A stretch of 64,000 nt of DNA, taken from assembly GCA_037379345.1 (NCBI GenBank), contig CM074518.1, positions 24,738,001 to 24,802,000 of the forward strand, in the 5' to 3' direction. A program made the translations under genes and the position numbers. Each line of letters starts with the position of its first letter. The first letter of the stretch is position 1. Shown piece by piece: positions 18,301-42,300 of the stretch. Source of the stretch: Perna viridis (lineage: Eukaryota). The notes below the pieces were generated by a model. That model saw only the letters and a program-made list of their open reading frames with translations. It did no database searches and was not told the DNA's origin.

Positions 18301-21300
18301 AAATGAGATTTTTCTGGAAACCTTGAATTTCCTCAAATTTAAAATTTCAAGCATGTTTCAATTTAGAAAAGATTTGAGGTAATAGTTGTATTGAAAAATC
18401 TCAAATGGAGATTTTCTCTTTTCCTTGAGTTTTTCATCAAACATAAAATTTCAAGAAAGCTGATTGGTTAAAATTTTAGTTGAGGAAAGATTTTAGGAAA
18501 TTTTTAATATGATTTTTTTATGAGACCAAAACCAGGTTCCCATTGCAATAGGTATTTATGCTCACCCAAAGGCTCTAGGGACATTGATTTGATTAAAACT
18601 CTGTAAATAAGTTTTTGTTCCGTTAAAGTGAAAACCATTTCAATACATTTATCTTCTATGAGTAATACTCGTAGGATACATCATGCAAATCTTGTAATAT
18701 TGTTTGGTTTTGCCTATTTCAGGAGTATGTGACTTTGAAGCTGATTTCTGTGACTGGACTCAGGAGACTAATACAGACAAATTTGATTGGTCAAGAGATA
18801 AAAATGGTACCTCCTCAACTGGAACTGGTCCCCAGTATGATCACAGCACAGAAAGCGAGAGCGGTAGATTTTATTATTATCTTTTAGACAGAAATTAGTA
18901 AAATTACTAAGTTAATACTAATATTTTTATGCCCTCTGCTTTGAAAGGAGGTATATATTGATGATTTTTTCTACAAGAGTTTAGATAGAGTTTTATAAAG
19001 AAACATCAGGTTAGTATGTTATAAATGGATAAAACAAAATCAACATGCCTAAATGTAAAATTTCTAGACTAAGTGCTTGAACCTGATGTTCAGGAATAAG
19101 TCTGCAATCTATCTTCACTCTAAAAGTGTCTCAGATAAGTATGAAGAACATTGTGTTTTCAATATTTTTAAGGCAATGTCTAAAAACCAGTGCATACAGA
19201 TAGAAATTTTGACTTTATTTTTTGAAAAACAAACCAACTTAAGGTATATCCTGTATATATTTGGTCTGTATTTAACGTTATTGGCTGTTGTCCTTCCTTC
19301 TTTGATAGAAATATTGTTGAATATAGAATTGTGTTTACATTTTCTTTTGTTAATTGATTAGAATTGTTTCATATTTGGTATGCAACTTTAATAAGATGAG
19401 TTTTTTTTTGGCCTTCATATTTTCTGTTTTGCTAAACTCCTGCCTGATATCTTAAAAAACAAATTGGGGTAATCTCCATGAACATTACATTGCATACCCA
19501 TAAAAGTTCCATTGAATGTTGTGTTACAGGGTATTACATTTACACGGAATCCTCAGCACCACGAAAACAAGGTGACAATGCCAAACTTGTAAGTCCAATG
19601 TTTGGTAATGACAGAACGGGAAAGTCCTGTTTCACATTCTGGTATCACATGCATGGGGACAATGTTGGACGTCTTAATGTTTACCTACGTCAGCAGGGAA
19701 ATGCAGACATATTAGTATGGAGTATGATTGGAAACCAGCCAAACCTTTGGTACTACAACAGTGTGAATCTTAATACCCAACAACAGTTTCAGGTGAAAAT
19801 TTGAACACTATCAGTGTATTATTCAGAAATACTGCATGTATTATTTATTACGAATGTAAGGTGGAAATGCAAATTTAATTCTCGACATTTTATTTTTTTT
19901 ATTTTTTTTTTCTTAGAAAAAATGATGTTAAAAGTTTTGATTATTGTGTATATTATTTGCATTTTTTACATCAATAAAGCATCACATTACAGTGTTCTAT
20001 GATTCCTATTTCCCGTTACCCGGGGCAAGTGAAATTTGGGTCAGGGAAAGTTAGGTACTTAGTTACACTTTCCCGTGGCAAGTTGAAAACTTCATATGCT
20101 GTAAGGATAAGTTAAGTTAGGAAAGCAGTCATTGACTGTGGGAAAGATGATTTTATATGGATTTTTTCCGAGGAAATCTCAATTTCTGAAAAAATCCTTG
20201 AACACTGTCATTAATTTCTGATATTACAGAAATAATATTTAGTCTATGAAATGGATATATCCATATATCCATACCTAAATGATTTTACAACTGCAGCTTA
20301 TCAACACATTCACAAGCTTTTTTTTTTGTTTTGATGAACATTAATGTGATAAGGAATATTTAGGCCATTCTAAGTTAATTCCTTGGTTCCCAGGACATTC
20401 CTCATCTCTTGTGGAATTGCCTTATTACCCTTTATATTACCATATCAATCAATTTCCCACAAAATAGCTACTTTCTCATTTTTTATTTCCGGCTATGAAC
20501 AATTTTTAAGGCATGCTAATCAATAATTTAATTAAGGTAATAAAATTGAAAAATGCCTTCCTCTCTCACAAGCTTTCATGAAAAAAAAAACAACCTGAAA
20601 ACTGATAAATTAACTTTGGCCTAATTAGCAACAATTTTATTGTACGGAAAATACCATAACATGCAACAATGTAAATTATAATGATAATGTATGGATAACT
20701 AATCATAAAACCTTCAAATGTTCAGCTCAATAAAAATGGTGAAAGGAAATTGTGTTATTTGAAATAAAGGACTCCAGACTTGGTTTGCTATTTAAGGAAG
20801 TAGACCTAGGGTAATGGACACAACTCCTGAAAACCATTGGAACGTTTGTATGCAGCATTTTACATCCATCTTAAGTAAGCATCTAATTAACTTGGATTGA
20901 TTTATTCTGCTTCAAACAAAAGCTTGAGAGGCTTTGGTGAAATTGAATATGATACAAACATATCAATGATTTCTAGAGATATGTCCCTTACCCTAGGTCT
21001 ACCACCTTGACAAAACGTGAATATGTATGTATGTAAGTTTTTTTTTAAACAGTTGATTCTAGAAGGAGTTGTTGGAAATGGTTACCAAGGAGACATTGCT
21101 ATTGATGATGTAGCCGTCACCAAAGGAGCCTGTCCACCACCAGGAAATTGTGATTTCGAATCTGACACATGTGGTTACTTGAATTCACGTGTAGGTGATG
21201 CATTTGATTGGCTAAGATCTGCTGGAGGAACTTTAACACCCAACACTGGACCAGCTACTGACCATACCACTGGCACTGACCAAGGATTTTACATGTTTAT

Positions 21301-24300
21301 CGAGTCATCAGGACGAAACAAAGGAGATCGTGCCTATTTCTACAGTCAGTACTACCCAGCAACCACAGGATCCTGTTACTCATTCTGGTACCACATGTAT
21401 GGTTCAGGTATGTTGTGAGTAAAAATACAGTGGATCATTTCTAAGCTCAACTTGGCATAGATTTAGAGATTTTAAAAAGGGAGAGGGGTTTATTGCACAA
21501 AAAAATAACTGAATTTAGAAATTTCCCAATCAAAGGGTGTCCAACCAAATGAATACATCCATGATCTGAAATTAATTTGGAAAGGAGTTCAATTCAGACA
21601 AGATGATGATGGGTTGATGAAATGTTGATTATTGCATTTTTCTGTTCCATCATATTTTCAGACTAGCTGATAACTGCTAACCTATTTTCTGTCAGAACTT
21701 GAGTGATTTTCAGGTCTGTAATTAGAAGAACTTGAACTAATTCTATAATTACTTGTATGATATTTATTATTTTGTACTTTAAAAAATTGTTTTGCTATTT
21801 TTAGACATTGGAGCTTTAAGGCTGTACAGACAAATGCCAAAGAATACCTTGTTAGTATGGAATATGACTGGTAACCAAGGCAACGTATGGCACCAAGCTA
21901 AGGTTTACATCAATAGTACAGCTGGACAGATATGGCAGGTCAGTAACATTTATACAGTGAATCCTATCTGTACCAAACATCTTTTAAAATCCTTTTATAG
22001 CAATTGACCTTTTTCATATTCCTGACTTTGACTTCATTTTTTGAGCAAAGGGAAGTAACCTTCCAACCATGAAGACTGGATTACTATCTGATTGGAGCAG
22101 TGGACAGCTGTATACTTCAAATCAAATATTTTGATTATTGTAGCAGTGATAAGTACTTGGTACCTTTTGAATAGATAATTTCAAACCATTTAACTTCTTA
22201 CCAAGTGTAAATAGCTTAAATTTCAAAGAAAAATGTTAATTGTTCTTCCTTTTCCCATTGAGACTGCTAACCAGGTTGTTGGGTGTTGCTAGGTTATGTC
22301 CCTTTGAAAAACTTGCTAAATTGGCTTGCATTCCATAAATATGAAAAATAACTATTATGACTGGTAAACAAAACACCTGTCTAAACTGAACTCATTTTTA
22401 ACTCCAAAAAATGTTGACAGGTTTCACTGTACCACAAAACAAATTATGAATTATATAAAAATGATGGATTAATAATGAATTTGATTTTCATGAAATTTAT
22501 CCTCATTCTACTATTGTAAAAAATTAACCATGCTTTGCCAAATATTTTCAAATCATATGCTTTGTTTTATTATTTTTTTCCAAGTCCAGTTAACTACCTA
22601 AGACATTTTATCAGATGATTGTCATTTAATCAAGGGAACTCCAACTCTTTCCTTAATCATCATCATTGTATTTGCCGTAAGACTTAACCTAATCAATTAT
22701 TTCTCTTTGCATTGGGGAGTGGCTATATCAGCACACACTCTTATATCTGCCTTTTGATGTAGCGTATGAGACCTTATTATATCTTGCTTATTCGTTCTCT
22801 TATTTAATGATATATGTGCTCCATAATTTTTCAAGGTGACCTTTGATGGAGAAGTTGGTGGAGGCTATGCAGGAGATATTGCCATTGATGACATTGTTGT
22901 CTACCCTGGGTTCTGTAACCAGACTATTACCACGACAACAATGATGCCACCTACCACTAAAAACTATCGTAAGTCAGGAATATTACTGCATTATCCTTAT
23001 TTGGTTTTCTTTAGCACTAAATCTAAAACAATATTAATTTAAGTGCTTTACTTTACAAGAATATTTTTTTAATACAATTTACCATGAAATATATTTAGAT
23101 ATCCCACACATTTGGTAGAAAAAATGTTCTACCAATCATAAAAAAATATGTACATATATTTACAGAAACAAAAATAAATCTCAGAAATAAAATATACAAA
23201 AATGAAAAATTTTACAATTAAGAATTTGTATTTAATAAGGCTACTTAGATTATACCCTGCCTTTTCTTCTTGTGACTGATTTTTTTATTTTCTGTTGTTA
23301 AGAAGAAAAAATATTGTTTATGTAGAAACTTGGGAGTCAATTTTAACACCCTGCCATATGAAGTGGCAAAGTATTATGTGTTACACTCAGTGTATCCATC
23401 TATTTATTAATCACCTGACAGTTTCCAGATGACAACTTTAGAAGATATTAAAGGATCCTTTTTTTTCAAATTTTGTATATTTATTGAGTATAATATTATA
23501 CAGATCAAGTTTGAATTTTAGTTTGATGAGATTAATTAAGTTTGAATTTCAGTTCGATGAGATTATTTACACAAAATGTAATGGTGATTTGAAGAAATGT
23601 TTGCACCCCAAAATTGTTTGTAACATGGTGGGATATCATTTAATGTCTTTATGGTTGAGGTATAAATTGTATTTCTTTTAGGTTGAAGTGATCAAAAATA
23701 TTTTTTTTCTTCTTTCTTACTTTTCTACTAGCTCCAACAAACCAAGATTGTAACTTTGACAACAACAATATTTGTCAGTACTCACAAGACCAGTCAGATC
23801 AATTTAATTGGTCATTACAGAAAGGAACAACTGCATCAATTTCTACTGGTCCTCCTTACGATCATAGTACTAAAGGTTCATCAGGTGAGGCCAATAAAGT
23901 TGAAGTCAGAGATTTTACACTTTAGAGACAAAGATATTTTTATTTTCAGCAGTGTGAGGTTTTTTTTCATCTCATGTACAGGTGTAAGTAGGATATTTGT
24001 TAAATTAAGGGAATTTTTGACTATCAGGACCTTATTTGTTAGCATAATCATCACCAAATTGTGTTTTAGATTTGAGAAAAAGAATAAAAAAAATGCCAGG
24101 GAATGACTTTGAAATCTCGGACACCTTTGTGTAAGATTGCACTGTCCAAAATTTATTTTTTAATTGATTTGATCTAATAAAGAAAACCACAAAAAATACA
24201 GGTATTTATGATCAGTAAATACACATATCATCTTGATTGATAGAAATAATACTAAAAAATATTGGGTGTCATCTGACTATTTGTAGTCCAATGAAAATAC

Positions 24301-27300
24301 TCCAATTATGATTATGATTATCAACCTGTTGATTTATTTTTCCAGGTTACTACATCTTCACTGAAGCCTCTGGTAGGAGGCCTAATGACACAGCCAGAAT
24401 TATAAGCCCTAACCTTAATGTAATGGATAATGGAAAGTGTGTCAAGTTCTGGTACCACATGTATGGAGAAAGTATCTACAAGCTAAACCTTTATGCTAAA
24501 AATGGTAAGGTGTACATTAAATTTGACATAGAATTTGAAATTTTTAATTCTAATGCAAATTTTCTGGTAATATATGAAGAGTCATTGGATAGCTTTGTAA
24601 ATTTCCAGGTATCAGTCCTGCAGTATTTTAAGCATGCAGGGATTGTTTTTTTAGATTTTTAATTGCTATTTTTACAGTTTAGTTTGACTGCTGCATTATG
24701 ATTGACTTGGTTTGGTTGTACATGGATTTTAAGGTTTTATCTTCTCAATCTATAAAAAGGATTAATGTTTACTGGCTTTTCTGACACATCATATGTGATC
24801 TAAATTTGTGACTGTCATCTGTCAAATCCATGATTGATTTCTCCAGATTTCTATAGAAAATACAGTTATCTCGTAAATGTTAGAAATTGAGAAGAATATT
24901 ACAGTCTCTTAAGAAAGTCCAGTTTTTGAAAACTTAATACAGTCATATATATTTGATTAAAACATGGAATTCCTCTACTTCAAAAACAAAATCTGCCCTA
25001 GTTGCCACATTTTACCATTACTGGTCTACTTTTTGAATGCTTTTACTTTTAATTAACCAACATATATTTTTTTGTTGGCCTTGTTAAATCATATCTTCCA
25101 GTAGCAGTTTTACAAAAAAAAATGATACATACAGTGTACCATATTCTTTAAAGGGAACTCTCTTGGAAACCCAATGTGGACCAAGCAAGGAGATCAAGGA
25201 GACAGATGGAAATATGCCCAAGTCTATATGATTCCTGCTGCAATGTCAGCTGTTCCCAAAGGACAAACATCAGCAACAGTCCAGGTTTGTATTGTGTAGA
25301 ATTATTGACACAGTGGGAGGTAATTTTAGGTGTAGGGAAATTTATGTGCCCTGGACTATATGATTCCTACAACATTGTCAGCTGTTCCTTCTCTTAAAGG
25401 TAGAGAATGGTAAAGAGCTCATTAAGAAGCCAAGAAAAGTTCAGTGGTTTTTATATATAACTCTTCATTTTGTTGAAAAAATAGTTAAGTTGGATAGATG
25501 TATTGTATTTAAAGATATGGAGGTGTCAACATTTAGGAATTGCTAATCTAATTTTTTTATTTATCTTTTAAAATTGACAACAGTGTGATTATTAAGTTGC
25601 TTCTTTTATTTTGTAGCTTGTATTTGAAGGAGTTAGAGGAACAGGATATAAAGGAGATATGGCCCTAGATGACATCTCTGTAAATGATGGAGCATGCCCA
25701 CCTTCAAGTTAGTACCAGAGAAATGGTTTTTTTTTTATATAGAATGGGAATCCATTTTCAGTATCATTTTGGGGTTAGAAGAATCACTCAATCAAATTTA
25801 GATAAAAATTGGGTTTTTTTATTGTTCAAATTGAAAGAGTAATTAAGGGAACCAAGGTTTTAGCAGTAATCAAAAGAATCTAATCCAGGGACATAGACCA
25901 GACATGGAAAACAGATATACACAACAAAGAACATATAGTAACTAAAATCATACATACAAAGTAACAAAAGCAAATGAGCAACTCCACTAAAAACTGGGAG
26001 TATGGACCAGGTGCACTGGTAGGGTAAGCACCCTCTGCTTTTCTAGAAACACCCGCCGAATTGCTCATAAAAAGGCAAGTGCGGGGTAGATGAAAGGAAA
26101 AATATAAATCAAATCAAATTTTCATTGAATGTCAGAGCATGTATAGCATTATTGGGAAAATTGTTTTCATTTCAGTAGGAGCTGTAAGGAGGGAAGAAAA
26201 TGATTGCATGATAAAAGAAAATGTAGAAATTAAAATATATTGATCAAGTTTTATCTGAAATATGAGTAGTGCTTTTTGACAGTACTAAATGCTTTCTTAT
26301 GATCAAATTTTAAACATTTGTTTTTAAATACCTGTAAGTTCATAGTTCATTGGTGGTTCTCACATGAATAAAAAAAATGAAATACTTATCTTTTATTTCA
26401 TTCTTCAAACAGCAACCTGTAGTTTTGAAACACAGACAATCTGTGGATTTAGCCAGGATTCATTTGATAATTTTGATTGGTCACGAGCATCAGGAAGAAC
26501 TACATCTGGAGGAACTGGTCCCCAATTTGATCATACCTATGGAACTAATGCTGGTAGGTTAAATGATTCTAGTACATACAGTGACCAATCAAGAGATTTT
26601 GAAAAGGGGGATTTCAGGCTGTTATTTGTTCATTATTTGGAATTTCCTTATAAATCAGGCCTATATAAATTGCTGTAGATGAGTAGAAAATTTAAATGTG
26701 AGATTTTTTCCAGCTTTAATCACTTGAAGCCGTCTTATCTGAACATAGGGTAAAATACTGGAATAATTTCAGAAGTACTAAGTGCTAATATGATCAATGT
26801 ACATATAATAGTACACTGGAACTTCATGTTTAGATTATTAGTAAGTAATGTTAATATTGAGACAAATATTCCTATTATTCCCTTATTTTAGAAATAAAAC
26901 CATTTTTATTTTTAAAAAAAAATCTTAGCCCCATGAAATGTGCTTGATTTAACCCAAAAGCCACTTAAAGCCCAACAGTGGGAAAAGTTCTATCATTTTG
27001 GATTTCATTTCAATTGAAGATAGTTCCTACGATTTTGACATATTTTGATTGTTCCATTGTTTGGTATTTTTTGGCCCATATCTCCAATTTCAGCACTATT
27101 GATATATGTACATATATAAATTCCTTTTATTTTTTTCTCAAGGGAACTACATGTTCATTGAGTCATCTAGACCAAGGGTGCCTGGCGATGTTGCCCGTCT
27201 TCTTACACCAATTTATCCAACAACTAATGGAAAATGTTTGACATTCTACTATCACATGTATGGGGCAGGAACTGGAACTCTTAATGTCAAAATGAAACAG

Positions 27301-30300
27301 CAAGGACAATTAACTCCACCAATCTGGACAAGGAAAGGAAACCAGGACAACAAATGGAGAATTGCTCAAGTCAACATTGTCACACCTTCGCCATATCAGG
27401 TTAGTTACATAAAGAAAATTACCCAAGTCAATATTGTCACTACTTCACCATACCAGGTTAGTTACATATGTTACGCCTTTGCCATACCAGGTTGGTTACA
27501 CAAGTCGGCATTGTGACACCTTCACCATGCCAGGTTCGTTACACAAGTTGGCATTGTCACACCTTCACCATATCAGGTTAGTTACACAAGTCAACAATGT
27601 CACACCTTCACCATATCAGGTTAGTGAATGTATTTGCTTCTTCCTTCAATTCAAGACTTTAAGATTGATTGTCATTACTTTTGAAATTACTTTCACTATA
27701 TTTTTAAAGTACTTACAAAAATGTCATAATTGCAGGTTGCATTTGAAGCAGTGCGTGGTCCATCATATACCAGTGACATTGCCATAGATGATGTCTCTCT
27801 CAATGATGGAAAATGTCCACCCCCTGGAAACTGTAACTTTGAATCTGGACTTTGTACATGGACTAATGATCAGATAGGAGATGATTTTGATTGGATAAGA
27901 AACCATGGAAGAACAACAAGTTCAGGAACAGGACCAAATGCTGATCATACTGTTAATAATCAAAATGGTGACTATTATTTCCTATTTTCTTTTCCAATCA
28001 TTTGAAAAGTTCAAAATGTAAGAAGGGTACCGGTGACAGTCTGGCTGACACATTGCCAGTTAACTTCAGTTAAATCCAAAAAGTTAAACCAAAACCTGTA
28101 CAATGTTTTGAAGCATCAAATCTTGGTGTTTTTTACATATTCATTTGTATATTTAAGTTATATTTATTTGAAAAATAAGGTTGTTTCCAATTCAGTAAAT
28201 TGAACCTCACGTTTCGGAATGGCTTTTGGTTAATTTAATTCTTTGGATTGATCAGTCAAATTAAAGCTTGACATGACAACAAAAGGAGAATCTTGATGTA
28301 TTTAATGACAGTAGTGATGGTTATGATTGTTTGGAATATTTTTATACCTGGGGCATAATGAAAGAGTAATCAAGGGAACCAAGGTTATAGCAGTAATCAA
28401 AAGAATGTAATCCGGGGACAAAGACCAGACATGGTAAACGAACATACACAACAAAGAACATAAAGTAACTAAAATCATACATACAAAGTTACAAAAGCAA
28501 ATGAGCAACTCAGACTCCACTAAAAACTGGGAACATGGACCAGGTGCACCGGTATGGTAAGCGTCCTCTGTTTTTCTAGAAACACCCGCCAAGCTGCTCA
28601 TAAAAAGTCCAGTCTGTGGTAGACAAATGAGGAAATGAAAACTATGACCCGTTGAATAAATCAGTTTTCATGGTGCAGATGGATACACCATAACCATCCA
28701 CGAGTTCATGTTGACAACCATAAAACTTCTGTAGTGATGACTTCAATCTTGTAGCAACATTACCCTGTTCCAGAAGCCTATTTGTTAGAGTTCTAGCATG
28801 ATACAAAAAGTCTGTGTAGTTTCGGCAAGCTCTGGCTTTAAAATTACCTTGTCTGTCTATCTGTTTTTGTGAGCTTGCTCTCGGTCTTTCTAGTTATACC
28901 CCTGACTTTGCAAATGATAAGGGCGTCCATTCTTCCTTCTGTTATATGGAGGGACCCATCTCTTATTCATTACTCCTCTTACACCACTGAATGGATATGG
29001 ATGAAACTTTCACATAATCTTTATTACATATTCCCCTTGTGCTCCTTTTGTGTTAGACTTCAATTGAAAGGTTAATAGGTACAATGTTATCAAATGAGGG
29101 GTATCAGGTCAGTGAGCATAGTTCATAGTTTTTCTAGTTCTTTTAAAGATGTCTTATTGTCACTAACTTTGACTTGAAAAGTTTTGAGGCTGTTTTTTTG
29201 TATTTAAATAGTTCTAAGCTCAATTCAGCTCTTGTCTACTTTTGTGTATTGTTTCAATGGTCTGTTCACATTGATCAAGAATTTCTTTTCAAAGACTTCA
29301 CAGTAGTAAAGGAAGCATAGTTACTAAAGCAAGAATCTTATTGCCAAATCACCATAAACTATGAAAGAAATTAAATCATTGATTTCAGTTATTATGGTTC
29401 ATTTAAATTTTAATTTTAGTAAAGTATTCAGGCAAATTGTATTATAATCAATGTAAATAAGACAAAACAAGAAACTTCATTTAAGTTATATTATCATGTG
29501 ATATGACTAATTTTCCTTACTCATTTCAGGATATTATCTGTATATTGAAGCATCATCACCCCAGAAACCTGGTCAAAAGGCTCGTATTCGATCCGAAGTT
29601 TTCCCTCCAACTGCTGGTAGTTGCTTCTCTTTCTTTTATTTGATGTATGGAAGGACAATGGGAACTTTGAATCTCTATCTTGACACCATTGGATCTTCAA
29701 GCACACCCAATCAGCATTCAAGCTTGTTCCAGAACTCAGTAAATCAGGGCCAAAAATGGATAAAGGCCTTTGTAAATGTCACCAGCAGACAGGAATATAC
29801 TCTTGCATTCGAGGCAGTTATCGGAAGTGGTTATTTAAGTGACATTGCAATAGATGACATTACATTAAAATCTGGATTATGTCCTGCTACCCCTCCATCC
29901 AGTCAGCTCTTCCAGTGTACAACTGGTAATTCCATATCTGCTCTCAAGGTGTGCAATTTCCAAAATGATTGTCCAGATGGAAGTGATGAAAAGAACTGTG
30001 GAAATTGCACTTTTGATAACTCACAGTGTGGATGGATAGATTCAAGTGCAGGATCTTTTAGATGGACAAGACACAACAATGGAACAGAAATTGGAAATAC
30101 TGGACCACGAAATGACCATACAAGGAATAATCCACTTGGATTTTACATGTATGTAGATTCTAATTTTGGACAAGGTTCTTCTAGATTTGCATCCCTACGA
30201 AGTCCAACTTTGAGAAACTCTGCTTCAACTTGTCAAATGACATTCTGGTACCACATGTATGGAAGAACTGGAACTTTGTTTGTAAGCAAGGTTGTTCAAG

Positions 30301-33300
30301 GTCAGCCTACTTCCTTGACATATCTGGGTAGAACAAATAGTAACCAATGGCAACAGAGAACAGTAAATATTGGACAAGTGAATCAAGACTTCTATATACA
30401 GTTCAGAGGATCTAAAACTTTGTCTCTTGTTGGAGATATTTCTATTGATGACATTTCTTTCCAGAACTGTGGACTTCCACCCATTCAGGCAACCTGTGGT
30501 GCTAACCAATTCCAGTGTACCAGAGGATCTTGTGTTGATAACAATCGACTTTGTGACTTTACAAATGATTGTGGAGATAATAGTGATGAGTCATCATGCT
30601 CTGGTTACCCATCAAGGTGTGCTTTTGATCTTTCATTTTGTGACTGGACTCAAGGAGCTGGTGATAGTTTTGACTGGTCCAGGAGAAATAGCCCAACACC
30701 AACTGCTGGAACAGGACCAACACATGATCATACAACGGGCCTCAGATCTGGTGGATTTGCCTATATTGAAACATCAAGACCAAGAAAAGTTGGTGACACA
30801 GCCATATTACTCAGCTCAGCGTACAATGCAGTTAACTCAGGTTGTTATTTTGTATTCTATTACATGTTGAATGGAAGGCTTGTTGGAAATTTGAATGTGT
30901 ACCTGAGACAAAATGGTGGTAGTACTCCATTGAAACAAATCTTCAGCACAACTGGAAACCGTGGTGATATATGGGATAGGGCCTTCATAAACATTCAATC
31001 TCAGTACCCTTTCCAGATTGTAATCCAGGCCACTGTTGGTGGACTGATTAGTGGAGATATTGCAATAGACGATACTGTTTTCAGTAAAGGATGTGTGAAA
31101 GCTCAAAATGTTCAGTTCCCTGGCTCAGTTAATATTCCACCTAATGTTCCAAGTGGACAGTGCCAAAACACAGCTGGAGATTTCAAAACTTGTGGACCAT
31201 GTGATTTTGAATCTGGAATGTGTGGATGGGTTGATAGAAGTAATGGAAGATTTAACTTCAGCAGGCATTCAGCAACGCAGAACAAAGGCAACATTGTTGG
31301 ACCATCACTAGACCATACAAAGAATTCAGCTCAGGGCTACTATGTTTTTGTTGAGGGATCACAAGGCGTATTCTACAGTACTGCTATTCTGCAAAGTCCT
31401 ATGATGCCCCCCTCTGCTAGTACTTGTGAGCTTTATTTCTACTACAACATGTATGGAGCAAATGTAGGTACTTTAACCACCATGCTCTTTATAAACGGAA
31501 CAAGATTCCCAATCGATATTATAAATGGCAATCAGGGACAAGGCTGGCATCTAAGGAAAGCCTATATTGGACAAAGAATTGGGGCTATTGCCACCAAATG
31601 GCAAGTGAAGTTCTATGTAAGACCTGGAAGATCTTTTGCCCCATCAAACACAAATGATATTGCCATAGATGATATCTCATTTGTAAACTGTGCAGGAACA
31701 GCTCCTAACATCAGCTGCAATTTTGACAGTGGACTCTGTAATTGGGTCCAGGCGGTGAATGATGATTTCCAATGGACTGTTAACAAAGGCACTACAAGAA
31801 CATCTGGAACTGGACCATCACGAGACCATACTTCAGGTTCAGGCCAGTATATTTATATTGAAACTTCTTACCCCAGGAAACGAGGAAACCAAGCTACACT
31901 GGATAGTCCTACCATGCCTCCCACTCCATTACAAGGCAACTGTTTGTCCTTCTGGTACTACATGTTTGGACCAACCATTGGAAGTCTTAGAGTCTATCTG
32001 ACTACATCTAATAACAGAGTTCTTTTCTGGTCAAAAAATGGCACTCAAGGTGATAAATGGACACAAGCCTATAGAACAATTAACTCCTCAATTGACTACA
32101 AAATTTCTCTAACTGGTATAGTTGGGAAAGGTCCACAGGGAGATATAGCAATTGATGATGTAACTGTTTCTCCAGGTCCTTGCCCCCTTCAGCCTGGTTG
32201 TGATTTTGAATCTGGTTTCTGTGACTGGAAACAGAGCAGTGCAGATGATTTTGACTGGACAATTGGCAATAATGGAACAACCTCTGTTGGAACAGGCCCT
32301 CCTTTTGATCACACTTACCAATCTAGCACTGGACATTATGCTTACATTGAAACATCTGGAAGACAACCTAATAATAGGGCAGTACTTCTTAGTCCAATGG
32401 TAACATCTGCTGTTACAACTACTAAATGTATGCAGTTTTGGTATCACATGTATGGAAAGACTATTGGATCATTGAATATTTATATCCAGAGAAATAATTC
32501 TCAAGCCAAACAGATATGGTCTAGAACTGGAAACCAGCAAAATATGTGGAGACATGGGCAAGTGACAATATATCAGTATGGAGTGTATTCCATTATGATA
32601 GAGGCAGTCAGAGGACTTGGTTACCAAGGAGATATTGCTATTGATGATGTTGTGATCACAAATGGTGCATGTGCCCCTGTTGGAACTTGTAATTTTGAGC
32701 AAGGAACATGTGGCTGGACCAATGCTATAACAGGTGATGATTTTGATTGGACACGAGACTTTGGTGGAACAAACAGTGCAAGAACTGGACCCAAAGTTGA
32801 TCACACTTTAGGTACATCCCAAGGTCATTACATGTACATTGAAACTTCTGGAACAGGAAGACGAATTGGAGAAAAGGCATGGTTTGTGAGTGATATCTTG
32901 AAACCTCTAACTTCTGGCTGTTTGAAGTTCTGGTATCACATGTATGGAGCTGGTATTGGCAAGTTGAATGTATATCAACAACTGTTTGGCTCACAAAGAC
33001 TGGCTTTGTTGTGGTCCTCAAGTAGTAACCATGGCAATGTATGGTTGAGTGCACAGGTGGCTGTTAGATCATCGCAAGAATTTACTTTAACTTTTGAAGG
33101 TGTCTATGGTGGTAATTACACTGGTGACATTGCCATTGATGATGTTGTCTTCCAAAGGGTAGGGTGCTCACAGACACCACCTACGACACCAACAGTGTTT
33201 CCACCATCAACAACAAGAAGTCCTTATCCACCCACTGCAGTAGACTGCAACTTTGAAAATGGAATATGCCTATGGTCACAAGACAAAAATGATACATTTG

Positions 33301-36300
33301 ATTGGACAATGAAAACTGGTACTACTACATCAGTGAAAACTGGTCCTGTTGCTGACCACACATTACAGAATGCAGCTGGACACTATATCTACATTGAGGT
33401 CTCTGGTAAAAGTCCAAACAGTACAGCTAGAATTGTTAGTCCCAATGTCAACATAAGGTCAGCTGGAGTATGTTTGAAGTTCTGGTACAACATGTATGGA
33501 GTCAATGTCAACAGATTGAGTGTTTACTCAAAGAATGCAGGAGTAATGAGCCAAGTTTGGACACGGTTTGGAAACCAGGGACTTGACTGGAAATATGCCC
33601 AGGTTCATATTACAAACCAAGGCCTTAATCAACAACTTGTCTTTGAAGGTGTTGCTGGAACACGTTATGCTGGGGATATAGCCCTTGACGATGTGACATT
33701 CAACATAGGAGATTGCCCACAGGCCTCAGTCTGTGACTTTGAAGATGGCATATGTGGCTACACACAGGACAGTAGTGATCAATTTGACTGGACCCTCAAC
33801 TCAGGGAGAACCAATAGTACTCGCACTGGACCTAAAGCAGATCATACTTTCCAGACAAATGAAGGAAAATACATTTACATTGAGTCATCTGCTCCAAGGA
33901 GAAGAAATGATAAGGCCAGAATTGACTCACCACTTTATCCAGCCACAACAGGATCCTGCTTGAAATTCTGGTTTAATATGTATGGCAGGTCAGTTGGATT
34001 TTTACAAGTCTATGTCAAACCCTCTGGAGCCAGTAATGGGAGAATGATCACAAAAATTGGACAAAACCATGGAACAGCATGGAAACCATTCCATGTAACA
34101 GTTCAGAGTCCAACTCCATTTAGAATCACTTTTGAGGGAATAGTTGGAAATGGTTATCAGGGTGACATAGCTCTTGATGATATTCAGCTTGTATCAGGAG
34201 CTTGTCCACCAAGAGGAAGTTGTGACTTCGAAAAAGACACATGTGCATGGAGAAATATGAATTTTAATGATACGATGGACTGGGAAAGAGCAAGGGGTAG
34301 AACTGCATCTGCAGGGACTGGACCTGCTGCAGACCACACTCTTAACACACCATATGGTACATATTTGTATATTGAAGCATCATCAAGGAAACAAGGAGAC
34401 AATGCATTGCTGGCTTCACCATGGTTACGACCTACAAATTCAAGTCGCTGCATGACATTCTGGTATAATATGTATGGAACAGGAATTGGATCTCTCAATG
34501 TTTATCAGCGAGTATATCCTCAACCATTAAACCAGCTTTTCACCTTGTTAGGTGACCAAGGGAATGGATGGAAACAGGCCCAAGTTAATATACAATCTTC
34601 TCCTTCAAGAGGGTACAATGTTTATATTAGAGGCATTGTGGGAACTAATTACAAAAGTGACATTTCCATTGATGACATTGTTATAAATAACTTTGGCTGT
34701 GGGAGCCTGCCACCTGCAACCACATCATCAACTTGTGCATACACATGTACTGGAAACAACCAATGTATTAGTAGTGACAAAGTTTGTGATTTTATACCTG
34801 ACTGTTCTGATGGTGGAGATGAAAAGCAGTGTGGTTATGATTGTACTTTTGAAAATGGACAGGTTTGCAGATGGACGAATAGCTCTACAACATCATTTAA
34901 GTGGTTAAAGAACAGAGGTGCCACACCTGATTCTAACACAGGCCCTTCAATTGACCACACAACTCTTGGACCTAATGGATACTACATGTATGTAGATGCA
35001 AGTGGAGGTGGACTCTACAGCCATGCCTACTTCACAAGTCCAACACTGAAACAGTCAGCAAGCACGTGTCAAATGACTTTCTGGTATCACATGTATGGAA
35101 CAGGAATAGGCACACTGTATATTTATATGAAGACTGTAGGAAGTACAACAAACACTAGAGTATGGAACTTGCAAGGCAATCAAGGAAACAGATGGAACAG
35201 AGGAGTTGTCAACATTGGACGGATAGACACCAACTTCCAGATTCTTTTTGATGCTAAAAGATCGTACAGTACCAAAGGAGACATTGCTATTGATGATATT
35301 AAATTCCAAGGTTGTGGCCTACCAACTGTTAGTACATCATGTGATGCCACTCACAACTTCACATGTGGAAGAGGAGCCTGCATCTCTTTGAACCGTGTAT
35401 GTGACTTTACTGATGACTGTGGTGACAACACTGATGAACAAATAAACACATGTAGTTCCTATATAGGATGTAACTTTGAATCTGGACTTTGTACCTTTTC
35501 ACAACTTACAGATGATGACTTTGATTGGACTAGACGTGCAGGAAGTACTCCATCTCAGCTGACTGGACCAGCTAGGGACCATACTCTAAACACAAAAGCA
35601 GGACTATACTTGTACATTGAAACTTCCCGTCCAAGAACACCGGGACAGAAAGCAAGACTTGCTAGTCAGTTCTTTCAACCAACAACTTCACACCCATATT
35701 GTACAATGAGATTTTACTACTTCATGTTTGGCAAAGATGTTAACCAGCTTGCTGTTTACACCAGGTCAAGTGTGAATGGAGGAACACTGTTAAGATATCG
35801 CAGATCTGGAAACCTTGGTGAATACTGGGAAAGAAGAGAAGTGGGTGTGTATTCTAGCAAACCTTTCCAATTCATCATAGAGGCTACTGTTGGAAAATCT
35901 GCCTATAGTGATATTGCTATTGATGATATCTCCTTCTCCAAAGCCTGCAAGCCATATACAGGACCAATATCTACCCTACCTCCAGGTTCTGTTACAACCA
36001 TTTCTCCCACTGGTAATTGCCCTACTGGACAGTACAAGTGCAATAATGGAAAATGTATTAACTCAACCTTAGTCTGTGACTTTATAAACAATTGTGGTGA
36101 TAACTCAGATGAAATCAAATGTCAAGAATGTGACTTCCAGTCTTCACAGTGTGGTTGGATGGATAGCAGTGCTGGCAGGTATCAGTGGGATAGACATAAT
36201 GGATCAACATCAACTGGCCCAAGAAATGATCACACTTATGGCACTTCGCAAGTTGGAAATTACATGTATGTTGATGCAGGAAGTGGACAGAATTATGGGA

Positions 36301-39300
36301 AAGCTGTACTGGTTTCCCCTCCTTTTGGTAACCTTAACTCATTGTGCTCATTGAATTTCTTCTACTATAAGAACAGTAATGCTGCTGGAACACTACGCAT
36401 GTACCTTGTGCCACCTAATATTAAATACAACTCCCTTGTTGGCAGAATAAGAATTTGGTCTGCTTTTGGTAATCATGGTAACACATGGAACAATGCTACA
36501 GTCGGAATTGGAAGAAGAACACCAGGATACTATCTGGTTCTTGAAGCCTTGCACTCAGGGAAAACTGTTGACATGGCTGTAGATGATTTCCATTTCACAA
36601 ACTGTGCTATTAGTCCATCTTCAACATACTGTGCTTCCAACCAGTTCACATGTGCAAGAAAGTCCTGTGTTGACCTTGCTTATGTGTGTGATTTCTCAGA
36701 TGACTGTGGTGACCAATCAGATGAAAAAAATTGTTCAAATTATGTTGAACGTTGTAACTTTGAACTTGACCTCTGTAATTGGATCCAAGATGACCAGGAC
36801 AATTTTGATTGGTCATATGGTTCAGGTGTAACAAGTACTGTTGGAACTGGACCAAGCTCTGACCATACATATGGGTCAAAAATAGGGCATTATATGTATA
36901 TTGAGACATCATCACCTAGGAAGTTAGGGGATGCTGCAAGACTAAAGAGTCCAGTATTTTCACCAAGCTCTAGTAATTGTAGGATCAGATTCTACTACCA
37001 TATGTATGGACCAGATGTAAATACTCTGAATTTGTACAAAGAGAACTATGAAAGTGGTCCCATGTCTCTGTTATGGACCAAAAATGGATCCCAAGCAAAT
37101 GCCTGGATAAGAGCAGTTGTGTCAATATCAGGGTCATCACCTTTCAGAGTTGTAATTGAAGCTGTACGAGGCAATGGTTATAAGGGTGATATCGCTGTTG
37201 ATGATGTTTCATTTACACCAGGATGTCAAGTGGTTCCTGCTGCCACATTACCTGCTGTATTAACAACCCCTGGACCATGTGGACCTGGCAAGTGGCAGTG
37301 TGCCAACAAACAATGTATTGATTACAGCAAAGTTTGTGATTTTAAGAATGACTGCAGTGATAACAGTGATGAAGCCAAATGCCCAGCTTCCTGTCCATTC
37401 AGCAGTGGAATGTGCTATTGGACCAATGACCAGAAAATGGCCCAAGGTAACTGGAATGTAGCCAGCAATGGTAACCCAGCAACAAACACAGGCCCAAGCA
37501 CAGACCACACCTCATCTTCAAGCTCTGGTGGATTTGCAGTCATTTCCAAAGCAGCCAATGATACAGGAAAGATTTTCCGTCTCAATAGTCCAATGTACCA
37601 CCAAGCAGGAAAGACTTGTAACTTCTCTTTATGGTATAACATCCATGGAAAAGCCTTCAGACAATTTAAGATTTACATCCATTCTGGTGGAGTAGAAAGT
37701 ACACTGTTTAGTCTCTATTATCTTCAGCTGAACAAACAACAGGACACTTGGCAACAAGCCCAAGTCAGACTACCAGGCTGTGCACACCAGTTTTACATCA
37801 TTATTGAGGGAATAAGCTATGGCAGACAGGCAGGATACATAGCAATAGATGATCTACAGTTCAGCAATTGTATGACTCCACCATCTACAGGATCTTGCAC
37901 AAAAGACCAATACACATGTTTAAGTGGAAACTGTGTTCCTATGAACTTACGTTGTGACCTGCAAAATGACTGTTGTGATGGCAGTGATGAAGTTAAGTCC
38001 CTTTGTATGGGTTACAGTCAGTGCACTTTTGAGTACTCATTGTGTGGATGGCAACAACTGACCACTGATAACTTCAACTGGACAAAACATCGAGGTCCAA
38101 CATCATCAAGTAGAACTGGACCAACACAAGATCATACCACAGGGTCAAGATCTGGATATTACTTATACATTGAATCATCAAGCCCTAGAAAACCAAATGA
38201 TACTGCCAGTATTGGGCTATATCTACCAAGAAACAAAGGTTCATGTTCAATGAGATTTTGGTACCATATGTATGGTAGTGCTATTGGTGGTATGAATGTT
38301 TATATCAATTCATTAGCTAGAGGAAAGATTAAACTTGACAGTGTGACATCACAACAGGGTAACAAATGGCTCCGTAGAGAAGTGAATTTAACAAGCTCGT
38401 CACCATATCAGGTGATCATTGAAGGTGTTGTTGGAGCAGGAATTACTGGAGACATAGCCATTGATGATGTTAGTTTCACACCAGGATGTGGAGCTCCAAC
38501 AGTTGTTACTCCTTCCCCTCATCCTATGACAACTCCTAGACCAAACCTTTGTCAAGGTTGGCAGTTCCAGTGTGGAGACAACAGCTGTATTGCCAAGATC
38601 AAAGTTTGCAATTTTAAACAAGACTGTAAAGATGGATCAGATGAGAAACAGTGTCCAACAGACTGTACATTTGAAGGGTCACAAGGAAATTGTGGATATA
38701 ATGAAACTGCTATTGATGGATTTGATTGGAGAGTTGGAAGTGGTGGTGATACATCAAGCCTTGTTGCTCCATCAGTTGATGCTACAACCCAAGATCAAAA
38801 CGGCCATTTTCTGTATATTAATGATAACACAGGTGGACACCCAGGAGTTAGTAAGAAAGCTCAAGTATCAAGTCCAACATACACAGTGGCTAATGGTAAC
38901 TGCAAAGTTACCTTTGCATACTATTTCAATGGACAAACACTTGGAACACTCTATATGTACATTCTTGAGCAGTCTGTTAAGACTCAGCTGTGGAGACTAT
39001 CTGGATACTCTGGCAGAAAATCTGATGACCAGTGGCATAAAGTCACTGTTGGTATCGGTCATCGTAGTTCTCCATTCAACCTCATTTTTACTGAAGTTTC
39101 AAGCACCTATAATGGAGCCACTGCTATTGACAATATTCAGTTTACAGACTGTAGCATGAGTCCACCAGTGCAGGTTTGCAACACAAATACACATTTGCTC
39201 TGTGGCAACAAAGCATGTATACCACTGTCATTACAATGTGATCTAACAGATAACTGCGGTGATGGCTCAGACGAAGCAAATTGTGGTAGCTATAAAGAGT

Positions 39301-42300
39301 ACAACTTTGAAAATGGAATTGGTGATCTTATCCAGAGCAAGACAGAAGATGATTTTGATTGGACACTTTATAGTGGAAAAACTCCATCAAGTTACACTGG
39401 TCCACAATGGGATCACACTATGGGAACATCAAGTGGACATTATCTATATATGGAAGCATCTGGAAAGAAATATAACCAAAAGACCTGGCTTCTAACCAAA
39501 TCATTTTACAGAACAACGGGTAAAGATTGTCGTATGAGGTTTTACTCTTATATGTATGGACAATATGTTAATACACTAAGTGTGTACTACAGAATATATA
39601 ATGCTGGACCACCCACAAAGTTAGTTCTGGCACGAGCCAATGAGCAAGGAGCATACTGGGCACGTCATGAAGTACAGTTGAATGTTAGCCAAAGCTTCCA
39701 GATTATTATTGAAGCTAAAGTTGGCGACAGCTATCTTGGAGACATCGCCATTGATGATCTAACTTTTACACCTGGTTGCCAGTATGACACATCCTCCTTA
39801 CCAAACCCACCTGCTGGTGTCACAACACATGCACCACCAGTTACACCAGCCAATAGATGTAACACAGTATCACAGTTCCAGTGCTCTGATGATAATAAAT
39901 GCATAAATAGTAACCAAGTATGCAACTTTGTCAATGATTGTGCTGATGGATCTGACGAATTACAGTGTGGTAAGTGTTAATATTGAAAACAAGATCAAAA
40001 AGCCTTGATTTTCAACCACTCCCACCAATGTATTCCATGCTAGAAACTTATATATTTGAATCTGATCAAAAACTGTAGTATGGGGGATAGATTTTTAAGC
40101 ACAAGTATGAAGAACATATGTACATTTTGTACATTTGTTTTACAGTTGTTAATTTTTCTGTTGTGATTAGGTCTAATGAAACTGTGCAAATCAAAATAAA
40201 GGACGAACATTGCATTTGATATTTTAAAAACGAAAAATTTTAAAAATGGTTATTTTCACATGATTTACTTTTTGGCTATATTCTTGCTAGACTTCGGAAT
40301 GCAGAAATGAAAGCATGCAAATAATAAAAAAAAATATATAGGGCTTATCTTCTTATGAGATACATGGCATAATCCCTCATTACAAAAATTACATCTAGGG
40401 AAAATAGTCACCATAGAAAAGACCCCATCCAAACATTTTTGAAGATGAGGTTTATCATGCACCTTTACTTTCCTTCAGTGAAAAAATCATGTGGATTTGG
40501 TTTGGATGAGTTATGTAACTGGATGATAAATGCATCACAGACAGCACCAGCTGATCAAACATACAAATGGAAAGCTGACCAAGGCATAACTGTACAAAAA
40601 GTGAGCGATTACAGACCCAAAAATGATCAGAGTGGGTCCCCTCAAGGATATTATCTATGGGCAGACAGCTCTCCTGGATCCTTTGACAGCCACACAGAAC
40701 TCTACACACCTGTCATTGGCCAAACAGGGCCCCAGTGCACTCTAGTATTGTACTACTACATGAAAGGAACAGCTGTTGGAAAATTGGAAGTTTTCACATT
40801 GTTTAACAAGCAAACTGATCATTTATGGGCAGTAGAAGGTAACCATGGAGGAAAATGGAATCGAGCAATGGTATTTATAGGTGCTAGGACAAACTTCCAA
40901 CTTTATATACAGGCAAGAAGAGGCAACTCTTTTGCTGGAGATATTGCTATTGACACCTTGCAGTTTGTCAACTGTGCAACACCAGAACCAGTTGTCGGAG
41001 GGTGTGGACAAAACCAATTTAAATGTGGCAATGGTTTCTGTATCAGTGAGGACAAACGTTGTGATTATTCTGATGATTGTGGAGATTCTACTGATGAACA
41101 GGTAAAAACGTTTGGCCCTGTTTTAACACATACCATTGACTTTCAATTTAATGAAAATTATACCTACTGATTGTTCCATTTTGTAACTTTATTTAAGTAC
41201 TGGGTGAATGGTACAATTATTAGGTACAACCTACTGAACCCTGAATAAAAAAACTGTCTACACCAGACACTTGTTGATACTTTTATGACATTTTGAATGC
41301 ATTTTGAACCTTAGTTAACCAAACACCTCAGTTACACCTGTCTTAAGAGATAAACATCAATTACATCTGTCTTAAGAGAAAAACTTCAGTTACACCTGTC
41401 TTACATGAATAATTATTAGTTACATACACCTTTCTTAAGAGAAGCACCTCAGTTATACCTGTCTTACGGGAAAAATTCTACAACCCAAAAGGGTTTAAGT
41501 TCTGACATGCTTCACTGTACAATGTCAATTAAATTACAGATACATATTGGGTATTTTGCATACTAATATTTTAAGTAATTACAGTAGCTCATTAAAGCTG
41601 ATAAAAATCCTAATCCCATTTTAGTTTACCATATAGACTAATTTGTTTGTTTTCTTCCTCTTTTAGCCTGAGACCTGTGACCAAAACTATAAGGCAAGGT
41701 GTGACTTTGAACATGGCATCTGTCAATCATGGTTCAATGACATTACAGATGACTTTAATTGGAAGTTATCAACTGGTCCCACAACAACCAGAGGAACCGG
41801 CCCTGTAACAGACCACACCCTAAGGTCAAGACAAGGTTGGTTTTAGTCTCACTCATAAGTATGTTTTAAATCTTGTACAGTTGAATGTATGGTTCATCTC
41901 ATTTCCTCCTAAAATCATTGTTTGATGGGGTAAATTGGCTTATGTTTTATGAAACATCACAAATTTAATGTTCAATTTTTCAGCAGATTTTTTAGAGAAA
42001 AATTGGTTCTTAACATGATATTGTATGTCAAAAAATCTGGAAAAGCACTTGACGAAGTCATGCAGGCAAATCCGTTCTGCTTTCATTTTACAGGCTTCAT
42101 GTTAGCAGTCTTATTTTTCAATATTTTAAAGATGTATCTGAAGAAATTCTTGAATTGGGATGTTTTTTTTTATGAAACATGGCCCTAACAGGATTAATAA
42201 TACTACAGCTGACTTCTGTGATAAAGGAACTATAGTTCTTTTCAATTAGATTTAATTTTGTGTGAGAAATCTCATTGTACATAACTCAGAGGTTGTGATA

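What the first reader, a model, noticed from the sequence alone, without database searches (positions are those of the whole stretch)
29530..39969. A 10.4-kb intronless internal exon in an intron-dense gene: candidate en-bloc (cDNA-mediated) loss of dozens of introns
Seen: the other 54 exons are 36-623 nt, and most MAM domains elsewhere are split by 2-4 introns at recurring sites (after DHTxxxxxG, before the final beta strand, between domains). This exon encodes 3480 codons (17.5 MAM and 11 LDLa) with none. Its first ~4.4 kb of repeat sequence is a domain-by-domain paralogue of 4163-29530, which carries 29 introns over about 25 kb. Two upstream repeat copies share intron sites and even exon lengths (699-839 and 26413-26553 are both 141 nt; 1456-1712 and 27143-27399 are both 257 nt), so those introns predate the duplication. 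Established: recombination with reverse-transcribed mRNA removes adjacent introns together, usually with a 3' bias. Inference: the intron-free state is derived, from one or a few very long cDNA conversions or in-frame insertion of a retrocopied segment. It is unusual in being internal, with 19 introns retained downstream.
Basis: partly seen in the sequence, partly recalled or inferred. Interest (0 to 1): 0.85.

Follow-up and report, generated by a model that had tools for sequence, protein, structure and literature searches.

The report
Ancient intron-free 10-kb exon in molluscs
A 10.4-kb exon in a bivalve's giant MAM/LDLa (MALRD1-like) gene is real and transcribed, and it replaces about 70 small exons that amphioxus, sea urchin and Trichoplax still keep, so dozens of neighbouring introns were removed cleanly before bivalves and gastropods split.

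Summary
Window 29530-39969 (+) is one uninterrupted 3,480-codon exon holding 18 MAM matches (17 whole, 1 partial) and 11 LDLa. RNA contigs from three studies splice 27967^29530 and then run on unbroken.

- The amphioxus orthologue aligns in register over all 3,479 residues at 42% identity and has about 70-74 introns there.
- 49 of 58 sea urchin introns and 12 of 14 Trichoplax introns sit at the amphioxus positions.
- Both bounding introns match amphioxus introns in position and in phase (phase 1).
- Loss sites carry no extra indels.

The event is old, not species-specific. The same block is a single reading frame in a 72%-identical relative, a heteroconch-clade bivalve, Haliotis rufescens and an unplaced lineage. 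It has shifted ends in Aplysia.

Downstream of the block, Haliotis keeps 18 of 33 amphioxus intron sites, against 0 of 74 inside it (Fisher p = 9e-12). That clustering favours one or a few concerted events. Recombination with reverse-transcribed spliced mRNA is the best-fitting mechanism, but it is inferred, not shown.

This is an extreme example of a known kind: extraordinarily large exons made by mRNA-mediated intron loss.

The parts
29530..39969 (+). Giant internal exon, 10,440 nt, phase 1 at both ends. It encodes a partial MAM (from HMM position 44), 17 whole MAM domains and 11 LDLa, with no stop codon and no intron.
   Evidence: RNA contigs are continuous from 29529 to 33099, and the runs hold 0.97-0.98 of the words of 29530-39529.
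27968..29529 (+). Upstream bounding intron (1,562 nt, GT..AG, phase 1). It is positionally homologous to the amphioxus intron after aa 161 of P0014. It contains a very high-copy dispersed repeat at about 28300-28900.
   Evidence: Joint 27966/27967 to 29529/29530 in RNA contigs from three studies. Amphioxus position and phase.
39970..40478 (+). Downstream bounding intron (509 nt, GTAAGT donor, phase 1). It is homologous to the amphioxus intron after aa 3690 and to the Haliotis intron after the giant exon.
   Evidence: Splice consensus and stop codon at 39978. Amphioxus phase 1. Haliotis exon map.
27736..27967 (+). Exon holding the last strand of one MAM plus the first ~45 residues of the next. 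It corresponds to amphioxus exon aa 84-161.
   Evidence: RNA joints, HMM hits 27733-27804 and 27832-27981, tblastn against amphioxus.
27143..27399 (+). 257-nt exon (MAM HMM positions 43-136). It corresponds to amphioxus exon aa 1-83.
   Evidence: RNA contig pieces 27142-27396 with a GT..AG joint.
40479..41101 (+). 623-nt exon holding a whole MAM plus an LDLa. It is a second, smaller merged exon: Haliotis has three exons here (132+291+201 nt) and amphioxus has several.
   Evidence: The same single ORF follows the giant exon in L002, L004 and L005. The boundaries are inferred, not read-verified.
4174..29529 (+). Intron-rich paralogous super-unit (LDLa-MAM-LDLa-MAM-LDLa-MAM, then further MAM domains). 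Its MAM domains match E5-E9 of the giant exon in order. Its last MAM continues into the giant exon as E1.
31086..31199 (+). 38-residue linker between MAM E3 and E4. The orthologues in L001, L002 and L005 have an LDLa module here; it is missing or degenerate in this lineage.

Best explanation
The 10.4-kb exon is the molluscan form of a segment of a giant extracellular MAM/LDLa protein gene (the MALRD1/MLRP2 orthologue). In the bilaterian ancestor this segment was built from about 70 small exons, with introns at fixed places in every MAM unit (about positions 45, 77 and 133, and between domains).

After the split from Ecdysozoa, and before bivalves and gastropods diverged, every intron between two still-existing phase-1 introns was removed precisely. 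This fused 17.5 MAM and about 12 LDLa modules into one exon.

The most likely mechanism is homologous recombination or gene conversion of the gene with a long, reverse-transcribed, spliced (partial) mRNA copy, in one or a few events. The conversion tract would have ended inside the exons that now border the block.

The fused exon has since been kept, is transcribed, and is spliced normally to its neighbours. Smaller later changes occurred at its edges: two more introns were lost downstream in bivalves, and introns are present near both ends in heterobranchs.

Shown: the exon is real and transcribed; the orthology is in register; the introns are ancestral; the loss is precise and clustered; the exon is widely shared among molluscs. 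Inferred: the reverse-transcriptase mechanism and the number of events.
For: Exon and splicing.

Conservation of the block as a single ORF of 3,345-3,541 aa at 46-72% identity in 15 protein clusters.

Genomic loci with the same structure:
- L002 (3.5-Mb contig): ORF 9965-20563, starting at MAM position 44.
- L004.
- L005.
- Haliotis L001/L008: ORF of about 10.7 kb with the same 5' boundary.

A quick tree follows the species groupings, with the window beside oysters among bivalves.

Amphioxus P0014 aligns in register at 42% identity and 2,667 bits, against 1,801 bits for the next register. It has 74 mapped introns in the block, 70 of them resolved with GT/GC-AG.

Intron sites shared with amphioxus within +/-1 aa:
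- Sea urchin: 49 of 58 (3.6 expected by chance).
- Trichoplax: 12 of 14 (1.0 expected).
- Priapulus: 9 of 47 (3.1 expected, p = 0.001).

The bounding introns match in position and phase.

There is no excess of indels at loss sites: 58 of 74 are clean, and the 22% gapped equals the 20% background.

In the downstream flank Haliotis retains 18 of 33 amphioxus sites, against 0 of 74 in the block (Fisher p = 8.9e-12).

The block is single-copy in the genome.

The reverse-transcriptase model predicts simultaneous loss of adjacent introns (PMC3652778).
Against: No trace of the mechanism can survive this long: there is no poly-A remnant and no intermediate allele.

The block is not at the 3' end. About 20 introns (about 3.5 kb of coding sequence) remain downstream, which simple 3'-primed cDNA models do not predict.

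A 10.4-kb conversion tract is very long.

Further small losses next to the block (the 623-nt exon) show the process was not strictly a single step.

Aplysia has introns at or near two ancestral sites close to the 3' end of the block. The original block may therefore have been shorter and grown later.

No chiton, cephalopod, annelid or brachiopod orthologue could be examined, so intermediates may exist.
Confidence: 0.72

Rival explanations
1. Gradual loss. The roughly 70 introns were removed one or a few at a time over the long stem lineage, by any mechanism, and the clean block reflects regional selection (for example against mis-splicing of many symmetric repeat exons) rather than one long cDNA event.
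For: Independent small losses clearly happen in this gene. Trichoplax keeps only 13-14 introns in the aligned part. The 623-nt exon merges exons that Haliotis keeps apart. The window exon 46194-46529 spans an amphioxus intron site.
Against: Retention is 0 of 74 inside the block against 18 of 33 in the adjacent flank (p = 9e-12). The boundaries are sharp and identical in bivalves, Haliotis and L005. No intermediate state was seen in any mollusc sampled.
Confidence: 0.2
2. In-frame replacement by a retrocopied segment. A processed partial copy was inserted and the original intron-bearing segment was deleted.
For: It would also give an intron-free block.
Against: Both ends coincide exactly, in position and phase, with ancestral introns. 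There is no duplicate or remnant, and the block is single-copy. It needs two rare events where gene conversion needs one.
Confidence: 0.04
3. The intron-free block is ancestral, and introns were gained in the flanks and in the outgroups.
For: Priapulus and Adineta do have many introns at non-ancestral positions in the block, so gain into this segment occurs.
Against: Amphioxus, sea urchin and Trichoplax share sites far above chance. The same within-domain sites recur in the window's own flanks. Priapulus keeps about 9 ancestral sites inside the block.
Confidence: 0.02
4. The exon grew by tandem duplication of an intron-less MAM-LDLa unit inside one exon, or it is an assembly or cDNA-contamination artefact.
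For: The content is repetitive, and the window may come from a gut-metagenome sample.
Against: The domains within the exon are old paralogues: out-of-register alignments give 29-35% identity. Each domain has its own orthologue in amphioxus. An independent DNA-like run joins the intron to the exon. Genomic contigs of at least four other species show the same exon.
Confidence: 0.02

Closest known systems
Extraordinarily large exons produced by mRNA-mediated (reverse-transcriptase model) intron loss. Source: Niu, Hou and Li 2005, Mol Biol Evol 22:1475, as cited in PMC3652778. The RT model predicts simultaneous loss of adjacent introns.
   Same: An outsized exon in an otherwise intron-rich gene. 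Losses are precise, with no indels, and adjacent introns go together. The flanking ancestral introns are kept. The block lies in the 3' part of a very long mRNA.
   Different: The scale is about 70 adjacent introns and 10.4 kb. The block is internal, with about 20 introns retained downstream. It has been conserved since before bivalves and gastropods split. The edges were later remodelled.
MALRD1 / MLRP2 family (MAM and LDL-receptor class A domain-containing proteins) of animals.
   Same: Alternating MAM and LDLa modules. There is in-register, domain-by-domain orthology with proteins so named in amphioxus, Pomacea, Haliotis, Saccostrea, sea urchin, Trichoplax, Nematostella and sturgeon.
   Different: The molluscan gene is far larger. 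The Haliotis gene models together suggest about 12,000 residues. No function has been tested in molluscs.
Processed retrogenes / retrocopies.
   Same: The intron-free sequence derives from spliced RNA.
   Different: The block sits in place in the parent gene, in frame, and is spliced to intron-bearing neighbours. It is single-copy and has no separate promoter or poly-A remnant.

Membership tests
MALRD1/MLRP2-like MAM + LDLa proteins | Repeated MAM domains (PF00629) | tested here: met
   18 stretches, E = 0, 2,118 bits.
MALRD1/MLRP2-like MAM + LDLa proteins | Interspersed LDL-receptor class A modules (PF00057) | tested here: met
   11 stretches, E = 6.8e-82.
MALRD1/MLRP2-like MAM + LDLa proteins | Collinear orthology with named family members, not just shared domains | tested here: met
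   The in-register alignment beats shifted registers: amphioxus 2,667 against 1,801 bits, Pomacea 2,626 against 1,785 bits, Haliotis 2,702 against 1,662 bits.
RT-model (mRNA-mediated) intron loss | The introns were present ancestrally at the lost sites | tested here: met
   Amphioxus has 74 introns in the block. Urchin shares 49 of 58 sites and Trichoplax 12 of 14.
RT-model (mRNA-mediated) intron loss | Precise excision with no loss or gain of flanking coding sequence | tested here: met
   58 of 74 sites have no gap within 8 alignment columns. The 22% gapped matches the 20% background.
RT-model (mRNA-mediated) intron loss | Adjacent introns lost together (clustering beyond independent loss) | tested here: met
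   0 of 74 retained in the block against 18 of 33 in the adjacent flank. Fisher p = 8.9e-12.
RT-model (mRNA-mediated) intron loss | Bias towards the 3' end of the transcript | tested here: inconclusive
   By the Haliotis models the block covers roughly 63-91% of the coding sequence, but about 20-22 introns remain downstream.
RT-model (mRNA-mediated) intron loss | Germline expression of the gene and an active reverse transcriptase at the time of loss | not testable with these tools
   The event predates the bivalve-gastropod split. The tissue of the RNA runs is not given.
Processed retrocopy | A separate locus, a poly-A tract or target-site duplications, and a parent copy elsewhere | tested here: not met
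   The block is single-copy, in place, and spliced to its neighbours.

The most novel reading that the evidence does not exclude
A single cDNA-templated conversion tract of at least 10.4 kb erased about 70 consecutive introns at once in a stem mollusc. No comparable case turned up in the literature searches run here. The block then stayed intron-free in bivalves and vetigastropods. The non-ancestral introns in heterobranchs, priapulids and rotifers would record independent re-intronisation of this segment, which would make the gene a natural experiment on both intron loss and intron gain.
Probability: 0.3. Interest if true: 0.75.

Novelty: new member of a known kind. Interest (0 to 1): 0.6.

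Why it matters
This is an unusually clean and large test case for how introns disappear. About 70 ancestral intron sites are mapped. The boundaries are sharp and match ancestral introns in position and phase. The adjacent flank of the same gene keeps more than half of its ancestral introns and so serves as an internal control. The block is shared by two molluscan classes (bivalves and gastropods) and one unplaced lineage.

It also shows that a 10-kb internal exon can be spliced correctly and kept for a very long time in animals whose genes otherwise have small exons. That bears on the idea that exon definition limits intron loss (PMC2614967).

There is a practical point for annotation. Public gene models in Haliotis and Saccostrea appear to cut this gene into pieces.

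Tried and rejected
- Tandem-duplication origin was rejected. The MAM domains inside the exon are old paralogues, and each has its own amphioxus orthologue.
- Artefact was rejected.
- The idea that the block was already intron-free in the protostome ancestor was weakened. It was prompted by the non-ancestral introns in Priapulus and Adineta. Priapulus keeps 7 exact and 9 near-exact ancestral sites inside the block (p = 0.001), so the introns were not all gone by then. It is not fully excluded for part of the block.
- The taxon of L005 (P0024) could not be found. A second protein search gave no close named relative.
- Saccostrea gave no DNA because the gene range was too long. Nematostella P0031 and Pomacea P0006 exceed the 5,000-residue limit.
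- No clearly in-register orthologue was found for an annelid (Owenia), a brachiopod (Lingula) or a cephalopod (Octopus).
- Literature searches for this gene's exon structure found nothing. Earlier notes of this scan added nothing.
The flanks were compared exon by exon only.
- The tree is the quick version; the careful search did not finish.
Full report

Yes. The + strand frame is open from 29511 to 39977. TTTCAG lies immediately before 29530 and GTAAGT immediately after 39969. The exon is 10,440 nt, exactly 3,480 codons, and is entered and left in phase 1.

Pfam finds 18 MAM stretches and 11 LDLa modules in its 3,479 whole codons. I built a MAM HMM from the exon's own domains and ran it over all six frames. 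It finds 17 whole domains and one partial domain that begins at HMM position 44, and none is interrupted. The MAM domains upstream and downstream are cut into pieces at recurring positions: about 45, about 77-97, about 133, and between domains. G+C is 0.40-0.41 in the exon against 0.30-0.36 around it.

**2. Is it transcribed as one exon, and is the assembly right?**

Twenty public runs from eight studies hold 0.95-0.99 of the sampled words of 29530-39529. I laid four runs on 27100-33099.
- Three small runs from three studies (X3, X4, X10) have no depth in the introns.
- Each has a single 14-15.6 kb contig showing GT..AG joints at 27399^27736 and 27967^29530, followed by unbroken sequence from 29529 to 33099. 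These runs therefore behave as RNA.
- A large DNA-like run (X1) has a 16.8-kb contig running from inside the intron (29003) into the exon.

The block is single-copy in the 723-Mb assembly.

It rests on the donor consensus, the stop codon at 39978, a complete LDLa ending at 39968, a whole MAM starting at 40490, and the orthologues described below.

**3. The exon is not peculiar to this genome.**

A protein search with the exon returned 15 clusters of single ORFs of 3,345-3,541 residues. They are 46-72% identical and collinear from end to end.

Genomic loci show the same anatomy:

| Locus | Source | Giant ORF | Notes |
|---|---|---|---|
| L002 | 3.5-Mb contig, 52% identity | 9965-20563 | Starts at MAM position 44, preceded by an exon holding 'last strand + first 47 residues', followed by a MAM+LDLa ORF of about 650 nt |
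| L004 | 72% identity | 844-11211 | Followed by ORF 11474-12112 |
| L005 | 46% identity | 996-11651 | Followed by 12017-12637 |
| L001/L008 | Haliotis rufescens | L008 7412 to about 18112 (about 10.7 kb) | Same domain string and same 5' boundary |

A quick maximum-likelihood tree of the last third of the block follows the species groupings.
- The window, with two close relatives, sits beside the oysters.
- A second bivalve clade contains Dreissena, and L002's protein P0008 falls in it.
- Haliotis groups with Gigantopelta.
- Pomacea groups with the heterobranchs.
- P0024 (L005) falls outside these groups. It has no close named relative.

The window is therefore from a non-oyster bivalve that groups with the oysters, and the giant exon predates the split between bivalves and gastropods.

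**4. Is the intron-free state derived?**

Branchiostoma lanceolatum P0014 aligns to all 3,479 residues in one register at 42% identity and 2,667 bits. Shifted registers give 29-33% identity and at most 1,801 bits. Each domain therefore has its own orthologue.

I mapped P0014 back onto its 70-kb gene. The aligned part, aa 162-3690, starts and ends exactly at exon boundaries and contains 75 exons, that is 74 introns. Seventy of those resolved with GT/GC-AG and an exact translation. Both bounding amphioxus introns are phase 1, as in the window.

Intron sites compared with amphioxus, within +/-1 residue:

| Species | Introns mapped | Shared with amphioxus | Expected by chance |
|---|---|---|---|
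| Sea urchin | 58 | 49 | 3.6 |
| Trichoplax sp. H2 | 14 | 12 | 1.0 |
| Priapulus | 47 | 9 (p = 0.001) | 3.1 |
| Adineta | 30 | 4 (not significant) | 1.9 |

The rest of the Priapulus introns lie at new places, including inside LDLa modules.

The introns are therefore older than Bilateria. At least some were still present in the protostome ancestor. All of them are gone in the molluscan block.

The flanks are ancestral too. Amphioxus exons aa 1-83 and 84-161 correspond to window exons 27143-27399 and 27736-27967. Eighteen of the 22 Haliotis introns downstream of the block coincide with amphioxus introns.

**5. How was it lost?**

Loss sites are no more gap-prone than the rest of the alignment: 58 of 74 are clean, and the 22% gapped matches the 20% background. 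Excision was therefore precise.

Retention is 0 of 74 in the block against 18 of 33 in the adjacent flank of the same gene (Fisher p = 8.9e-12). With the flank's per-site loss rate, 74 independent losses in a row would have a probability of about 5e-26.

Precision, adjacency and ends that coincide with ancestral introns are what the reverse-transcriptase model predicts. In that model the gene recombines with cDNA made from spliced mRNA (PMC3652778). Large exons have already been used as evidence for it (Niu et al. 2005, cited there).

By the Haliotis models the block lies at roughly 63-91% of a coding sequence of about 12,000 codons. It is in the 3' third but not at the end.

I therefore favour one or a few long conversion events. 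This step is inference. A gradual series of losses under regional selection cannot be excluded without intermediate taxa.

**6. Later changes at the edges.**

In the window, L002, L004 and L005, the exon after the block (623 nt in the window) holds a whole MAM plus an LDLa. Haliotis has three exons there (132+291+201 nt) and amphioxus has more.

In Aplysia the giant exon is 9,363 nt and its ends are shifted.
- Three introns lie at non-ancestral sites near the 5' end.
- Two introns lie near the 3' end, one exactly at and one near ancestral amphioxus sites.
- Two heterobranch-like single ORFs (P0063, P0084) align over nearly the same range, residues 273 to about 3337 of the window's exon.

Whether the 3' pair is retained or regained is open.

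**7.

Upstream MAM pieces between 15241 and 27411 best-hit exon domains E5 to E9 in order. The LDLa-MAM pattern ahead of them also matches the start of the block. The outgroup maps now make the same case directly.

**8. What is known.**

No paper on the exon structure of this gene was found. The kind of event is known. Its size, its internal position and its age are what stand out.

Noticed in passing
window 28300-28900 (inside the intron before the giant exon): A dispersed, non-tandem element of extreme copy number. Summed contig depth reaches about 10 million in the DNA-like run and tens of thousands in the RNA runs, with many rearranged joints. TRF finds no tandem array.
   Followed up: partly
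window 31086-31199: The LDLa module that sits between MAM E3 and E4 in Haliotis, L002 and L005 is missing here. Only a 38-residue linker remains, without the LDLa signature.
   Followed up: partly
L006 (Priapulus caudatus) and L011 (Adineta steineri): Most introns in the orthologous block lie at non-ancestral positions. In Priapulus several LDLa modules are split at position 18. In Adineta there are 30 introns of 52-85 nt. This suggests heavy intron turnover or re-gain in this segment.
   Followed up: partly
L009 (Aplysia californica) 14182-33024: The heterobranch version of the giant exon is 9,363 nt with shifted ends. Five introns lie inside the region that is one exon in bivalves, one of them exactly at an ancestral site (M18:77).
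   Followed up: partly
L001/L008 (Haliotis rufescens) and the Saccostrea echinata record: Public annotation appears to split this gene. In Haliotis an 8,781-residue model ends, and a 3,845-residue model starts, inside the same uninterrupted ORF. In Saccostrea there are 8,502-, 644- and 2,304-residue models in a row, the last spanning 232 kb across other genes.
   Followed up: no
window 44298-44507 and 45754-46027; window 47214-47341: There are two short 20-nt G-rich repeats and a 70-nt tandem repeat (4 copies) in introns. The 44-46 kb bin has a GC skew of 0.34. A 128-N gap lies at 47214-47341 and was left untouched.
   Followed up: no
G000:C8:24643432-24768264 (up to 95 kb upstream of the window start): Short paralogous exon matches to the block continue far upstream on the same strand. 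The gene, or a tandem array of such genes, extends well beyond the window.
   Followed up: no
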